DNA of 64,000 bases from Macrostomum hystrix (taxonomy: Eukaryota > Animalia > Platyhelminthes): assembly GCA_950097015.1 (NCBI GenBank), contig CATNEN010000038.1, positions 21,638,001 to 21,702,000 on the forward strand. Reading direction: 5' to 3'. The first letter of the stretch is position 1. Each line of letters starts with the position of its first letter. The position numbers and the translations under genes were made by a program. The notes beneath the pieces were generated by a model. That model did not search any database and was not told where the DNA came from. It saw only the letters and a list, made by a program, of their open reading frames with translations. Positions 6,601 through 12,600 of this stretch are shown in pieces.

Positions 6601-9600
6601 CAAAGTAGACAGGTAGCCAAGTTATTCAAAATTAGACAGGTAGCCAAGGTAGTCAAAGTAGACAGGTAGCCAAGTTATTCAAAATTAGACAGGTAGCCAA
6701 GGTAGTTTAAAGTAGACAGGTAGCCAAGGTAGTTTAAAGTAGACAGGTAGCCAAGGTAGTCAAAAGTAGACAGGTAGCCAAGTTAGTCAAAAGTAGGCAG
6801 GCATCCAAGGTAGTCAAAGTAGACAGTTCAGGCGGTAACAAACTAGCAAGCGTTAATAGTTTGCTAAAAGTACACAAGTGAACATTGCGCTGACGTACTG
6901 TCCCGCCGCTGGCTTAGGCATTAGCGAATGCGTTGGCGCAGTGTTTTGCGCCCTGTCTGGCACATTGGCATCCGTTAGGCTGCATCGCGGCCTATTAAAC
7001 TGTCTTCTACACTGGCCGGCTATGAGATTCTCTGCTAGCATCCTATGCGGCACCATTGTGGCTAGATTTAGCGCCGATCTAGACGACGTGGATCTAGTCC
7101 TGCCCTTCACAATGCGATCGCTAACTAATTGTCTAATCCAATTGGTTGGCATAACCATTGTCATTGCCAGCTTATTGTATCTGCCAGCTTTGGCTGTTTG
7201 CGCAGTTGTTATAATATTCTATTATTGTTTGCAAGTGAGTAAAATAGTACAAAATCCAAAGATGGTGCTGATTCTTGCCAACGATTTTTAAACAACAGAT
7301 TCGACACTAAAATCAATTTAATAGCATTTTTGTTGAGATTAACAAACCTCTATAAACACGGAAAGCACAACGGGGTGTGTTTGTTTGTCTATGCATTTGT
7401 TGTTTTCTAATTTTAGCATTATAAAATATTTACTAGCCTACTGGAAAGTAGAATACGGAGAAAATGAAATTCTCCGTTAATGAAATGAATAAGAATTATA
7501 TTTTTTATATCATTCTTTTGCACTACTTACACTTTTATCCGTAAGTAGCAAGAAGGAAGCATTTTTTGATCTGCAACATTTCTAACCAATATTCAAGTTG
7601 TTAGAGAAGGTTTCTGGGACACTAAACACTCACTGTCAATAAATATACGTATTATATTCGTAAATCCTAACTAGCCTACTTACGCCAGTAGTCACAGTAG
7701 GTTTGTTTCGTGTTCAGGCGAAACTGAACTGTATCGATGATATTGCAGCCGGTCATACGGCGGTCGGCATGCTGGGCATTTGGTTGTGCGCGGCGAGAGC
7801 CTCGCGTCGTTTACACGGCGCCCTTCTGCGCTCCCTGATGCGACAGCCGGTCCACGCGCACGAACTGCGCATTAGCGGTCGCACAATTAACGCATTCTCT
7901 GGCGACGTGACGCGCTTAGATAGTATGATGCCTCGCCGATGGAAATGGGTCATCCAGAGCTGCTTCTGGGTGGCTGAAAATTTTTCCGGCCTTGCTATCG
8001 TCAGTTTAATGAGGCCGTCGCCGATATTACCGCTGGCTATTGTCGTGTGCGCACCTTTCTTCCTTGTGCAGGTGGCCTGTAGTTTAGAACCCCAATCTAT
8101 ATATTTATATCATAGCTATATTAAGGCGAGGAAGAACACTTTGATTCTAAAATGTACATGTTGATTCGCAATTTCTTCAACTAAAAAAATTTCTAATTTG
8201 CTGACTTCTTTGATTGAAGTGCGCTGATTAATATTTTTCTGGGATTTTTAACGACTCGCTAGAAGAAACTTTGTCAGTTTTAAAGCTATCTGAGGGTGGG
8301 ATTTTGAATACATCTGAGTGTGGGATTTGGATTGCATCCTAGGGTAAGATTTTAAAGGCATCCTAGGATAAGTTTTTAAATGCATCCCAGGATGAGATTT
8401 TTAAGCTATCCCAGGGGAGATTTTGAAGCTACCTGGGTGTGGGATTTTTAATGCATCCTAGGGTGAGATTTTGAAGCTATCCCAGGGTGAGATTTTGAAG
8501 CTATCCCAGGGTGAGATTTTGAAGCTACCTGGGTGTGGGATTTTGAATGCATCCTAGGGTGAGATTTTGAAGCTATCCCAGGGTGAGATTTTGAAGCTAC
8601 CTGAGTGTGGGATTTTAAATGCATCCTAGAGTGAAATTTTGAAGCTATCTGAGGCAAAGAATTTTTTATATTTCCTAGGGTGATATTTTAAATGCATCCT
8701 AAGGTGAGATTTTGAAGCTATCTGAGGGAATGAAAGTGGGATTTTGAATGCATCCTAAGGTGAGATCTTGAAGCTATCTGAGGGACTCAGAGTGGGATTT
8801 CGAATGCATCCAAGGGTGAGATTTTTTAAGCTACCAAATAGTAAGAGTTAATATATCTCCTAGAATGCGATTTTGAAGCTGTCATAGGGTGACATTTTGC
8901 ATCTATTCAAGTTCAAGAATTAAAATAATCCAATTGCTAGTTGTGTTAATATTATTCGGTTCAGACATCTAGTCTATATTAAAATATTTTAGGTTAAGAA
9001 TAGTAAAGTTTTTTATTAAATAAAATATTTGGTCTCAATCAGCTCATTGTTGCTTTTCTTGAAATATTTTATGGTCTATTTTCAAATCTCACACTCAATA
9101 GACTACTCTTAATGAGTAGTTAAGATTAGTAATAAATTATCGCCACGATTGTACATGCAATTCGATTAGCGCGATAATAATCATTAACAATTGTAACTAC
9201 GCGCTCACTCCGACACCAGCCCTGACCATCTTCTGGGGCGCATTCGTCTCGTCCATTGCCTGCCTTCGAGCTTCGCGCCTGTTGCACAACAACCTATTGA
9301 ATCGAATCCTGGCCTGCCTGCTAACATTCTTCGAGTCCACGCCGTTGGGCCGCATTGTTAACAGGTTTAGCAGCGATATTGATTGCGTTGATCGCGATCT
9401 GGCTGAGAAGTGGCGCACAATGCTACGAATCTCATTTTGGCTGCTTGAGGCCCTCATCGCCGTGTCCTACGCGCTGCCTCTGTTCCTTGTCGCTCTAATC
9501 GGCATCGCGGCAATGTTCATCGCTGTGCAGGTTAATGAATAGCTCTTCTGTTGATGGTGTTGGTTGTGGTGTTGTAGTTTCGAGTGTTGTTGTTGTTGTC

Positions 9601-12600
9601 GCTTTATTATTTAACACTCTAGACACTTCTTCTAGCTCAGTAGGTGGCTAAGGAAAACGCAAATGCATGCAAACTCACCCCCGTTGCTTCTTTGCGCGCT
9701 GATTCAAAACGCTGATTGAATTGGTACTATTCCTGCAATAATTCGTAATTGGTTGTGCGCTTTTTTAGTGCTGTGTACTAATAGCATTTTAGATTGCATA
9801 TTTATGTGTACGTTGTTATTATCCGTTACTAACTACTTAAGCACAAGCAAAGTCACTTACACAAACTTGTAAATCAAGTCTTTTATATTTACTTCTAGCA
9901 TTAACCGCACTTTCATGTTGTATCACACCGCACACCTGTACTCTTTAACAACGTGAGTTCGGTTTTAAGTTTAAAAAGCAGGCGCGCTTCATAAGTAAAT
10001 GTGCACTTTAAAATTACTTGCACACTTTAAAAGTACATGCGTACTTTAAAAGTACATGCGTACTTTAAAAGTACACGCGTACTTAAAAGTACACGCGTAG
10101 TTATAAACATGCTTTGCTTTTCTATCCATACTTTTATGCTACGTTTTGGTAAGAAATGTAATTATTTTTTCCCACAATTAACTTCATAATTGATCTAATT
10201 TCCCGTGTCCCTGTTGAATTTAGCAATAGTTGTACTGATGTCCCAGTTTCTAACCGCTCTCGGCGGCTCCCGGGCATCCGTAGCCCTCTACTGGGGCCTG
10301 CTGGCGAATCTGCTCAGATCACCCTTAGAAGCGCTATTGTCTGCAGACGAGGAAGGCCATCAAGTTGGGAATAAAATTTTGCAAACTTTTGCCGATGATT
10401 TAGCCGCTGTCGATTCTGAAATGGCGCTAACTTGTCGCTATCTAACACAGGCAGTTTGCGGCTTACTGGAAAGGGCCGTGGTGCTTTGCCAGCTAGATAC
10501 CAGCCTGCTGCTGGCCCTACTAACTAGCATTGCCGCTCTGCTGCTTTTGCAGGTTAAAGAATTATTCAGCGGCTCCTTGATCCGGACGCCTTTTTCTAAA
10601 TTTTAGTTCCATTTGTACGAGCTTCATAGAGCTCGTAAAGATACATTTTTACAGATTTGGAGCTATTTTCTTAATTTATAAGTCCTAAAAATCCAAAATT
10701 TTAAACCTAATCTGTAGGCATCTATTATATGGCCTAAATATGTATTTTTTACGTTGCTTGTGGACTGCAAAAATGATAATAATGCACTTTAACAGTAATT
10801 AGGACTTCAGGTAGTGAGTGAAAGGAGTTTAAGCTGTACAATCAAGCCCTCCAGCCTTAGCTACGTCCCAAATGAATGTGGCCTAGCCGTGGCCTAGCCC
10901 TAATCAGAGGCAAACGCTTCAACAGCTCGCCAATCAACCTCTAATCCTAATAGATTTAACTGTCTAGTCATGGCTATTAATTATCATGATGGTATTAGGG
11001 CTAATAATTAACAGCCTAGTAGTCTATTCTGCAGTCAAATACCGTGTGACAATTACATAGTTGAATTCATAAGAGCTGCTTATAAATTGCCTACCATGTG
11101 AACACCGCATGATAATTGACCTTCAACTTTTGGTTGTATAAATAGCAACACAAAATTTAAATCTCATCCAACTATATTCGTAAAAAGACAGCAGTTTTTT
11201 CTGTAGAAGATTATTTAGCGGTATAATGCCATAATTGTTTAACCTATCTGTAAAATCTCGCAGAGAATATTTATCAGCTCATCTCGTCAGTTGAAGCGCC
11301 TGGAGTCCATGGCTAAGTCGCCAATTTTTTCGCACTTCTCCGAGACTCTGTCCGGAGTGACTACCATCCGAGCATTCGATCAGCAGGGCCATTTCAAACG
11401 GATCTGCAACGAACGCGTTAATTTCTTCAACCGCTGCTATTATCCCAACATCAGCTCGAATCGATGGCTGGCAGTAAGGCTGGAATTAGTTGGCAATCTG
11501 ATTGTCACATTCACTTGCCTATTCGGTGTTCTAGCTAGGAGCTCCGTTTCACCAGGCCTAGTCGGTCTGGCCGCCATCTACGCTCTGAATGTCACGCAGA
11601 GTCTGAACTGGCTGATTAGAATGACCTCGGAATTGGAGACTAATATTGTGGCCGTAGAAAGGTAAAATCTAATTTGCGTACTCTGTGGCATTACCTAGCA
11701 CGGTAACATTTAAGGTCATCGTATAGCTATTTCATCCAATAGCGGCAGGCGCGCGCGAGCTTGCTTAGCCAATAGAAATAGGCGTTTGTTTTTTGCACAC
11801 AAGCGAACTAATTTTAATGATTGCGTAATCCATTTCACTCTCCTGTCGGCTAGGATCAAAGAGTACTCGGAGCTGGAGCAGGAGGCGCCCTGGCAACGAC
11901 CGGACGAGCCGCCCCTGCCTGATGGCTGGCCGCTTGGCGGTGTCAGCTTCCGCGGCTACGCCTGCCGCTATCGAGACGACCTGCCGCCCGCCCTGGCCGA
12001 CATCAATCTCGACGTCAAGCCGGGCCAACGCGTGGGCGTTGTCGGCCGCACTGGCTCGGGTAAAAGTACATTGACATTGTCCCTGTTCAGAGTGCTGGAG
12101 CCGCGCGAAGGCCGACTGCTTATAGACGGCGTGGACGTCACTCAGCTGGGGCTGCACACGCTCAGGACTAAGATCACCTTGATTCCTCAGGTGAGTTTTT
12201 TCACCTGTCGGTGACCATCGTGTCATTTCTAAGAAAACCAGCGCTATATTCCTAGAATCTCATTTGTCATTTTCCTGGAATCTCAACACTTATTACCACC
12301 TGTTTTTTTATAATAATTGCAAGAGGGCTACAGGTAATGACACATCACTTGGTGACACTAGTCCTCAAGCCAGCGAGAAGGAAATTCTGCCCATTTTGCT
12401 GACACCTGAGCACACACGATTCTGTATGCAGGCACACGCTCACACAGGTGTGTACATCGGCCCTGACTTTCTCATTGTCAGGCAGTGTACACTCTCACGG
12501 TGCCTTGGAGGTTGGCCCTCAATGGCGTAAATTGCACGACAAGCCCCCAAGCCTTCTCTCCGCCGCTGCGCCCCAAATGAATGTGGCCTCGCCGCGGAAT

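What the first reader, a model, noticed from the sequence alone, without database searches (positions are those of the whole stretch)
6918..10552. Four tandem mutually exclusive exons swap the TM13-TM15 module of an MRP1-type exporter
Seen: four homologous exons (317, 323, 311 and 329 nt) lie between the phase-1 donor at 5806 and the phase-0 acceptor at 11264. Each starts in phase 1 with an 18-residue stretch ending in the conserved AS, and each ends in Q|GT at phase 0. All are 3n+2 long, so joining two or three shifts the frame and joining all four reads the internal ones out of frame. All four are free of stop codons despite extreme protein divergence. Established: MRP1 homologues of Drosophila and C. 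elegans use mutually exclusive exon clusters, and TMD2 helices line the substrate cavity of ABCC exporters. Inference: one gene makes four pumps with different specificity, probably an independently evolved cluster in this lineage. Automated annotation would likely keep only one exon.
Basis: partly seen in the sequence, partly recalled or inferred. Interest (0 to 1): 0.92.

Follow-up and report, generated by a model that had tools for sequence, protein, structure and literature searches.

The report
Flatworm MRP pump with swappable exons
A drug-exporter (MRP/ABCC) gene of the flatworm Macrostomum hystrix carries four alternative versions of one exon, of which RNA data show at least two used one at a time; this is a real but unsurprising case, because MRP genes of insects, nematodes and other phyla are already known to do the same.

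Summary
Four homologous exons (6918-7234, 7749-8071, 9220-9530, 10224-10552) lie between donor 5806 and acceptor 11264. All are 3n+2 long, AG/GT-bounded and open only in the homologous frame. All match Pfam ABC_membrane in one register.

The genome is Macrostomum hystrix, and the gene is a long (TMD0-bearing) ABCC.

Spliced contigs from public runs show:
- Variant 3 is the default form.
- Variant 1 is joined to both flanking exons, and is the deeper form in one run of another study.
- Variant 2 has only its acceptor joined. The contig then runs on unspliced past its weak donor.
- Variant 4 shows no junction, but it is 71-72% identical, start to end, to an M. lignano orthologue. That is as conserved as the constitutive exons.
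- No contig joins two variants. Any such product, or skipping all four, meets a stop within 3-87 nt.

My simple test found no docking/selector RNA pairing.

The insect MRP cluster starts at the same residue but ends about 30 residues earlier, and the Caenorhabditis cluster covers the distal half. This fits the published picture of independent MRP exon arrays (Yue et al. 2017), so this is a new member of a known kind.

The scan has two other first-reader notes on this same stretch, and none on other DNA.

The parts
5491..5806 (+). 3' part of the upstream constitutive exon. It ends in phase 1 at donor AAG|GTGAGT. Its exact 5' end was not determined.
   Evidence: Open frame 5443-5841. 68% identical to M. 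lignano P0003 residues 1044-1149. Donor 5806 is joined to 6918, 7749 and 9220 in RNA contigs.
6918..7234 (+). Variant exon E1 (317 nt, 105 codons). A minor, apparently regulated alternative.
   Evidence: The 5806->6918 joint is seen in X1 (95 nt on the shorter side) and in X4. The 7234->11264 joint is seen in X4, where contig 17 holds the whole exon plus 28-30 nt of both flanking exons. Pfam ABC_membrane 31.5 bits. Matches MRP1 1036-1127 at E = 6e-7. Strong donor GTGAGT.
7749..8071 (+). Variant exon E2 (323 nt, 107 codons). Its acceptor is used; its donor was not seen spliced.
   Evidence: The 5806->7749 joint is seen in X4 only (26 nt on the shorter side). The same contig runs on unspliced to 8201. 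Donor GTGGCC is weak. Pfam 31.8 bits. Matches ABCC2 1042-1129 at E = 9e-9.
9220..9530 (+). Variant exon E3 (311 nt, 103 codons). The default exon.
   Evidence: The 5806->9220 joint is seen in X2-X4 and the 9530->11264 joint in all four runs, at the depth of the constitutive exons. 89% identical to the exon used in six M. lignano models. Matches ABCC2 1038-1138 at E = 2e-15.
10224..10552 (+). Variant exon E4 (329 nt, 109 codons). The most divergent variant, with an insertion in the coupling loop. It is conserved in M. lignano, but no splice junction was seen.
   Evidence: Contigs 21 and 22 cross both of its ends unspliced, at intron-level depth. The only two hits among 1.84 billion representative proteins are M. 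lignano models that carry an E4 orthologue. That orthologue is 71-72% identical from first residue to final Q. Pfam 18.8 bits.
11264..11662 (+). Downstream constitutive exon, with a phase-0 acceptor (cytoplasmic extension of TM15 onward).
   Evidence: Open frame, 95% identical to M. lignano residues 1252-1385. It is the acceptor of the joints from 7234 and 9530.
6015..6826 (.). Tandem array (53-nt unit, about 15 copies) in the intron before E1. Role unknown; it probably belongs to the genome's general repeat load.
8278..8822 (.). Degenerate tandem array (24/72-nt units) in the intron between E2 and E3. Role unknown.
11231..11245 (+). 15-nt stretch just upstream of acceptor 11264 that can pair 14/15 with the E4 donor region 10551-10565. 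A candidate only.
   Evidence: Pair I20. No test of significance or conservation was passed.

Best explanation
This is a cluster of four tandemly duplicated, mutually exclusive exons in a long (TMD0-L0-TMD1-NBD1-TMD2-NBD2) ABCC/MRP-type exporter gene of the flatworm Macrostomum hystrix.

One variant is spliced between donor 5806 and acceptor 11264. It supplies the segment homologous to MRP1 residues ~1027-1129: TM13, the TM13-TM14 cytoplasmic coupling loop, TM14 and most of TM15.

Use of the variants:
- E3 is the default exon.
- E1 is a genuine alternative whose share differs between data sets.
- E2 and E4 are probably rarer or condition-specific alternatives (inferred).

Exclusivity is guaranteed at least at the level of productive mRNA. 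All variants are 3n+2, so any mRNA with two or more variants, or with none, meets a premature stop and should be removed by nonsense-mediated decay. The frame logic is shown here; the decay itself is inferred. How the spliceosome picks a variant is unknown.

The isoforms would be pumps that differ in three membrane helices and in the loop that couples TMD2 to the NBDs. They could therefore differ in substrate range, in ATPase coupling, or in both (inferred).
For: Anatomy:
- Exact boundaries, phases and 3n+2 lengths, with open frames only in the homologous frame and GC-rich islands in AT-rich introns.
- All four match ABC_membrane at profile positions 56-157. E1-E3 hit solved ABCC structures in register.

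Gene and organism:
- 13 coding exons collinear with the 1655-aa M. lignano protein P0003, including TMD0 exons upstream of the window.
- The assembly is 220,453,370 b in 42 contigs, identical to the M. hystrix assembly in Table 1 of PMC10468722.

RNA (GT..AG joints):
- 5806->9220 and 9530->11264 at constitutive depth.
- 5806->6918 in two studies, and 7234->11264.
- 5806->7749 once.
- No joint between two variants.
- In X1 the contig depth is 6.7 for E1 against 3.3 for E3. In X4 it is 7 for E1 against 33 for E3.

Conservation:
- The E4 orthologue in M. lignano is 71-72% identical over the full exon. The TM parts are 80-88% identical, and the only indel is in the loop.
- Constitutive exons are 47-96% identical between the two species.
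- In the tree, E3 and E4 each pair with their M. lignano orthologue (99/97 and 100/99), so the duplication predates the split of the two species. E4 has a long stem (3.1) but short tips (0.10 and 0.35).

Frame fail-safe: a second variant hits a stop after 3-87 nt; after two variants the stop is at 11292; with all skipped it is at 11314.
Against: - No junction of E4 appears in the four runs laid, and no 8071->11264 junction for E2. The one E2 contig retains the downstream intron. E2's donor GTGGCC is poor.
- The RNA evidence is assembled contigs, not reads. Contigs drop rare forms and give only rough depths, and three of the junction overlaps are 26-30 nt. That is what a k=31 graph bubble yields, but it is below the tool's 31-nt rule of thumb.
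- No E1 or E2 orthologue is seen in any M. lignano protein model. DNA of relatives could not be fetched.
- E4 falls below Pfam's cut-off, and its coupling-loop motif is degenerate.
- Nothing here measures transport or NMD.
Confidence: 0.75

Rival explanations
1. Only E1 and E3 are working alternatives. E2 and/or E4 are relics or non-productive ('poison') exons: they are occasionally recognised by the spliceosome but yield intron-retaining or degraded RNA.
For: E2's acceptor is used, but the same contig runs through its weak donor GTGGCC into the intron, where the frame stops near 8162. E4 is covered only at intron-level depth, and unspliced at both ends. E4 scores 18.8 bits against Pfam's 28-bit cut-off, and E = 0.036 against PDB. 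E1, E2 and the E4 stem have very long branches.
Against: E4 is 71-72% identical to its M. lignano orthologue over its full length, with boundaries kept. That matches the constitutive exons, whose least constrained members are only 47-48% identical. E2 still exceeds Pfam's cut-off, hits ABCC2 at E = 9e-9, and keeps frame, length class and splice dinucleotides despite being 20-25% identical to everything else. Four small contig sets cannot show absence.
Confidence: 0.2
2. The choice of variant is made by competing long-range RNA pairings (one docking site and a selector per variant), as in insect Dscam1, 14-3-3zeta and MRP. Two other first-reader notes on this stretch propose this.
For: The mechanism is established for insect MRP (PMC6071210, citing Yue et al. 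2017). One 15-nt pairing (14/15) links the E4 donor 10551-10565 with 11231-11245 beside the downstream acceptor. Repeats in intron 1 and intron 4 are partly complementary.
Against: A scan was run for any site in the first or last intron of the cluster that pairs with all three inter-variant introns. It gave scores no better than shuffled sequence: 99/100, 95/100, 54/100 and 90/100 shuffles reached the observed value. The longest inverted repeats are 70-80% complementary and AT-rich. No relative's intron sequence was available to test conservation or covariation.
Confidence: 0.15
3. The four copies are an assembly artefact, or a chance set of open frames.
For: None found.
Against: The copies are only 20-29% identical on the tree alignment (26-34% to E1), so they are not collapsed or expanded haplotypes. 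RNA contigs from two studies match at 99% or more and splice at the predicted sites. The M. lignano orthologue has both E3 and E4.
Confidence: 0.01

Closest known systems
Insect MRP (Drosophila CG6214 'exon 8' cluster and its orthologues, e.g. Tribolium castaneum MRP1 isoforms)
   Same: The gene family is the same, and so is the part of TMD2. Tribolium isoforms X1 and X4 differ only in a 73-74-residue block aligned to M. lignano residues 1150-1222. That block starts at the same residue as the flatworm variable exon. Over-long insect models repeat the same block up to six times. D. melanogaster has 8 variants (PMC6071210).
   Different: The insect unit ends about 30 residues earlier, before TM14/TM15, whereas the flatworm unit runs to residue 1252. 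Insect variants group with each other in the tree, not with the flatworm variants. Insect choice is reported to use docking/selector RNA pairing, for which I found no support here. Some beetles also vary a TMD1 block (Zophobas, M. lignano residues 605-652). The flatworm has a single copy of that block.
Caenorhabditis elegans mrp-1 exons 13A-13D
   Same: There are four homologous mutually exclusive exons in an MRP gene (PMC4165533). A Caenorhabditis angaria model repeats a block aligned to about M. lignano residues 1200-1260, which is the distal half of the flatworm module.
   Different: The C. elegans exons are 156 nt (3n, 52 residues) and 50-60% identical in protein. Frame cannot enforce exclusivity there. 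The flatworm exons are 311-329 nt (3n+2), about twice as long, and 20-34% identical in protein.
Metazoan MRP tandem exon arrays as a class (Yue et al. 2017, RNA Biol 14:1399)
   Same: [quoted passage not shown] The present cluster fits that picture. From memory, unverified because the paper is not held, its abstract lists Platyhelminthes among the phyla.
   Different: I could not check which flatworm, which exon, or how many variants that paper reports.
Frame-plus-NMD enforced mutually exclusive exons (e.g. FGFR2 IIIb/IIIc, cited as ref. 11 in PMC6071210)
   Same: Including both exons, or neither, shifts the frame and creates a premature stop, so only single-inclusion mRNAs persist.
   Different: Here there are four exons rather than two, and NMD was not tested.

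Membership tests
Long ABCC / MRP1-type exporter | Two ABC_membrane domains and two NBDs in one chain | tested here: met
   Exon translations show Walker A/B motifs and signatures of NBD1 (3589-5013) and NBD2 (11852-13448), with TMD1 at 699-2613. The gene is collinear with P0003, which carries PF00664 and PF00005. The variable exons match PF00664.
Long ABCC / MRP1-type exporter | N-terminal TMD0 plus L0 linker | tested here: met
   Four exons upstream of the window (L004) align to P0003 residues 1-346. P0003 carries PF24357.
Long ABCC / MRP1-type exporter | Glutathione-conjugate / organic-anion transport activity | not testable with these tools
   There is only pharmacology in whole M. lignano (MK571- and probenecid-sensitive dye export, PMC3826144), which is not assigned to this gene.
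Mutually exclusive exon cluster | Tandem homologous exons of the same phase and compatible length between shared donor and acceptor | tested here: met
Mutually exclusive exon cluster | Each variant found spliced alone to both constitutive neighbours | tested here: inconclusive
   Met for E3 (four runs) and E1 (both junctions). For E2 only the acceptor junction is seen. For E4 there is none. Only assembled contigs of four runs were available.
Mutually exclusive exon cluster | No stable mRNA with two or more variants or with none | tested here: inconclusive
   No such joint appears, but contigs drop rare forms. The frame logic predicts premature stops for all such products.
Docking-site/selector (competing RNA structure) controlled cluster | One intronic docking site complementary to a selector next to every variant | tested here: not met
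   An ungapped pairing scan of intron 1 and intron 5 against introns 2-4 scored no better than shuffles. This is a weak test: one genome, no bulges allowed, no conservation data.
Orthologue of the arthropod MRP exon cluster (same ancestral duplication) | Same exon boundaries, and variants interleaved with arthropod variants in a tree | tested here: not met
   The 5' boundary coincides (M. lignano residue 1150), but the 3' boundary differs (1222 against 1252). Insect variants cluster together, apart from the flatworm variants, though the deep nodes are unresolved.

The most novel reading that the evidence does not exclude
The Macrostomum cluster is an independent, flatworm-specific invention that reuses an ancient intron position. 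Its variants are regulated isoforms: E1 and E3 switch between samples, and E4 has a rebuilt NBD-coupling loop with an insertion. They would change not only which compounds the pump takes but how TMD2 talks to the ATPase domains. That would make it a natural swap experiment on the coupling helix of an ABCC transporter.
Probability: 0.3. Interest if true: 0.5.

Novelty: new member of a known kind. Interest (0 to 1): 0.4.

Why it matters
It adds a free-living flatworm, with partial RNA support, to the animals that diversify an MRP exporter by swapping one exon. It also shows that the same stretch of TMD2 (TM13 to TM15) is the target in flatworms, insects and nematodes, although the exon units differ. 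That recurrence suggests this segment is the part of the pump evolution finds easiest, or most useful, to vary.

Practically, the default gene models of Macrostomum either miss three of the four variants or fuse two of them. Studies of detoxification or drug response in these model flatworms would therefore overlook the isoforms.

Tried and rejected
1. Short-protein searches with E4 and E2 alone found nothing. The length filter makes this uninformative.
As a result there is no dN/dS, no search for E1/E2 orthologues at DNA level, and no test of intron conservation.
3. Yue et al. 2017 (PMC5711460, PMID 28277933) is not held. Three literature searches did not turn up a passage naming the phyla it covers.
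4. Docking/selector pairing:
   - An ungapped scoring scan with shuffles gave no signal.
   - The inverted-repeat list showed only weak AT-rich pairs, plus one 15-nt pair at the E4 donor.
5. Other mechanisms of exclusivity were rejected. There are no U12-type donors, and the inter-variant introns are 514-1148 nt, so steric hindrance is ruled out.
6. A second cluster, like the insect TMD1 cluster, was looked for and not found in this gene.
7. All eight members of the P0003 cluster in M. lignano were checked for E1- or E2-like exons. None has one: the five that cover this region carry the E3 orthologue, and the two shortest or N-terminal models do not reach it.
8. The high-depth bin in the last intron has no Rfam match and no unusual fold.
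The isoforms were therefore not folded, and all searches were run exon by exon, by reference.

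
Full report
**What is there**

The stretch lies inside a + strand gene whose translated exons are plainly an ABCC transporter. TMD1 is at 699-2613 and NBD1 at 3589-5013. A linker and the start of TMD2 end at 5806. 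The rest of TMD2 starts at 11264, and NBD2 is at 11852-13448. Four further exons upstream of the window (locus L004) encode TMD0 and the L0 linker. It is therefore a long, MRP1-type ABCC.

The window is G000:C38:21638001-21702000. The assembly has 220,453,370 bases in 42 contigs. That is exactly the Macrostomum hystrix assembly in Table 1 of PMC10468722.

**Checking the observation**

| Exon | Coordinates | Length |
|---|---|---|
| E1 | 6918-7234 | 317 nt |
| E2 | 7749-8071 | 323 nt |
| E3 | 9220-9530 | 311 nt |
| E4 | 10224-10552 | 329 nt |

- All four are 3n+2, each preceded by AG and followed by GT.
- They lie between the phase-1 donor at 5806 (AAG|GTGAGT) and the phase-0 acceptor at 11264.
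- The homologous frame is open in all four. The other frames carry 4-10 stops each.
- Shuffles of each exon's own letters stay open in only 0.8-2.7% of trials.
- The exons are GC islands (47-58%) in 33-40% GC introns.
- The translations align with invariant A17, S18 and a final Q, at 26-34% identity to E1 (20-29% between variants on the trimmed tree alignment).
- All four match Pfam ABC_membrane at the same profile positions, 56-157. E1, E2 and E3 exceed the 28-bit gathering score even as 105-residue fragments. E4 scores 18.8 bits.
- E3, E1 and E2 hit solved ABCC structures in register, at MRP1 ~1027-1129 and ABCC2 ~1038-1138. E4 does so only marginally (E = 0.036).
- A profile of the four finds no fifth copy at the locus, and one copy in each other ABCC paralogue of the genome.

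**Which part of the pump**

MRP1 residues ~1027-1129 correspond to four elements. I take the topology from my memory of the UniProt annotation; no tool checked it.
- The membrane part of TM13.
- The TM13-TM14 cytoplasmic loop with the conserved G-R-I-x-N-R-F-S-x-D motif, which couples to the NBDs.
- TM14.
- Nearly all of the membrane part of TM15.

Hydropathy profiles of all four variants show an N-terminal hydrophobic segment and a long C-terminal hydrophobic block, consistent with that layout.

It matters for the functional inference that most residues of the MRP1 substrate pocket lie outside this module. These are K333, H336, Y441, W554, R594, R1198, Y1244, W1247 and R1250 in rat numbering. 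Only M1094 in TM14 lies inside it (PMC10776481).

The columns that are invariant among the four variants sit in the TM13 extension and the coupling loop. E4 has an insertion in that loop.

**RNA evidence**

One run (X1) is labelled organism A and three (X2-X4) organism B. All match at 99% or more. The contigs are spliced with GT..AG joints, so they derive from RNA. Low-depth unspliced contigs over the introns indicate that pre-mRNA is present too.

- **E3:** 5806->9220 is seen in X2-X4 and 9530->11264 in all four runs, at the depth of the flanking exons (23-33).
- **E1, upstream junction:** 5806->6918 is seen in X1, with 155 and 95 nt on the two sides, and in X4.
- **E1, downstream junction:** 7234->11264 is seen in X4. 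There one 377-nt contig holds the whole of E1 with 28-30 nt of each constitutive exon. That is what a k=31 graph bubble looks like.
- **E1 against E3:** in X1 the E1 contig is deeper than the E3 contig (6.7 against 3.3). In X4 E1 is about a fifth of E3 (7 against 33). In X2 and X3 no spliced E1 contig is listed. Contig depths are rough, but this hints at regulated use.
- **E2:** 5806->7749 occurs once (X4, 26 nt). That contig then runs straight through the E2 donor to 8201. The donor, GTGGCC, is the weakest of the set.
- **E4:** two contigs cross its acceptor and its donor unspliced, at intron-level depth.
- No joint links two variants.

**Conservation**

A search of 1.84 billion representative proteins with E4 returned only two hits. 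Both are M. lignano models, UniRef A0A1I8FHP8 and A0A1I8HTH2. Both contain an E3 orthologue followed by an E4 orthologue, patched together by the gene predictor.

- The E4 orthologue is 71-72% identical from the first residue to the final Q.
- Its TM parts are 80-88% identical, and its only indel lies in the loop.
- Constitutive exons of the same gene are 47-96% identical between the two species, and E3 is 89%.
- E4 is therefore as constrained as ordinary exons of this gene, which argues strongly against a decaying relic.
- In a tree of the module, E3 and E4 each pair with their M. lignano orthologue (99/97 and 100/99). E4 shows a long stem (3.1 changes per site) and short tips (0.10 and 0.35). 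This indicates fast change after duplication, then constraint.
- For E1 and E2 I have no orthologue. Six other M. lignano models, from three gene copies, all use E3 only.

**How exclusivity works**

- A second variant would be read from its first base and meets a stop after 78, 87, 3 or 3 nt (E1-E4).
- After two variants the downstream exon stops at 11292. With all variants skipped it stops at 11314.
- Hence only single-inclusion mRNAs encode a full pump. Removal of the others by NMD is inferred from general knowledge.
- U12-type splice sites are absent, and the inter-variant introns (514, 1148 and 693 nt) are too long for steric exclusion.
- Two other first-reader notes on this stretch propose docking sites and selectors.
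- My scan looked for any 14- or 18-nt site, in the first or last intron, that pairs with all three inter-variant introns. It scored no better than shuffled sequence: 99, 95, 54 and 90 of 100 shuffles reached the observed value.
- The inverted repeats found are weak. The exception is a 14/15 pairing of the E4 donor with 11231-11245.
- This does not exclude RNA-structure control, because the test is crude and no relative's introns were available. But nothing here supports it.

**Comparison with known clusters**

- **Insects.** Tribolium MRP1 isoforms X1 and X4 differ only in a 73-74-residue block aligned to M. lignano residues 1150-1222.
  - The flatworm exon covers 1150-1252.
  - Over-long Anopheles, Timema, Dendroctonus and Kerria models repeat the same ~72-80-residue block several times.
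  - So the insect cluster starts at the same residue and ends about 30 residues earlier.
- **Nematodes.** A Caenorhabditis angaria model repeats a block aligned to about residues 1200-1260.
  - The C. elegans mrp-1 exons 13A-D are 156 nt, 3n (PMC4165533).
  - So the nematode cluster covers the distal half.
- **M. hystrix paralogues.** These have no intron at either boundary of the module.
- **Tree.** The insect variants sit in an insect clade. The six Macrostomum sequences form one clade in the best tree, but with no support (44/0).

Independent origin is thus the better reading, though it is not proven. The shared 5' boundary may be an old intron position.

All of this fits what PMC6071210 reports from Yue et al. 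2017: tandem exon arrays in metazoan MRP genes arose by multiple independent duplications in different phyla. I recall, but could not verify, that the abstract of that paper lists Platyhelminthes.

**Verdict**

- A mutually exclusive cluster is very likely, with E3 as default and E1 as a proven alternative.
- E4 is very probably functional, on conservation.
- E2 is uncertain.
- 'Four pumps with different specificity' is an untested inference. A change in TMD-NBD coupling is an equally good reading.

It is a new member of a known kind, of moderate interest.

Noticed in passing
window 10746-10941: One bin in the intron between E4 and the downstream exon has contig depth 67-92 in runs X2-X4. That is 2-3 times the exon depth and about 15 times the other intron bins. 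The stretch is single copy in the genome, has no Rfam match and no unusual fold (z = 0.56). It may be an intron-hosted stable small RNA or a separate transcript.
   Followed up: partly
window 6015-6826, 8278-8822, 9982-10097: Three of the five introns of the cluster hold tandem arrays: a 53-nt unit x15, 24/72-nt units, and a 19-nt unit x6. Units of the first and third arrays are partly complementary (17 nt, 76-82%). The window holds many other tandem arrays (e.g. 13.5-19 kb), so this may simply be the genome's habit.
   Followed up: partly
M. lignano proteins P0001 (A0A1I8FHP8) and P0002 (A0A1I8HTH2): Both public gene models fuse the E3 and E4 orthologues in one protein by using internal false splice sites, so they are mis-annotated. 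Over-long MRP models in Anopheles atroparvus (1879 aa), Timema cristinae (1834 aa), Dendroctonus ponderosae (1679 aa) and Caenorhabditis angaria (1624 aa) show the same error, with several variants concatenated.
   Followed up: yes
Zophobas morio MRP1 isoforms P0098/P0099: These isoforms differ in a 48-residue block aligned to M. lignano residues 605-652 (TMD1). That is a second variable block in beetles, probably the counterpart of the Drosophila 'exon 4' pair. The flatworm gene has one copy of this block, inside exon 2308-2613.
   Followed up: partly
G000:C35:1224253-1253245 and C34:1311511-1312110, C34:2100171-2100737 (L005-L009): The other M. hystrix ABCC paralogues encode the same module inside a larger exon, with no intron at either boundary. 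Three of them lie within 30 kb on contig C35 as a tandem gene family. The C34a module is closer to other animals' MRP1/ABCC2 (45-55% identity) than the default exon E3 of the clustered gene is (33-38%).
   Followed up: partly
window 1-690 and G000:C38:21637376-21638280: A tandem repeat whose translation reads '...IPGGFQNSNP.WISEWQSQVDF...' fills the intron before exon 699-1367. It has diverged copies on at least eight other contigs.
   Followed up: no
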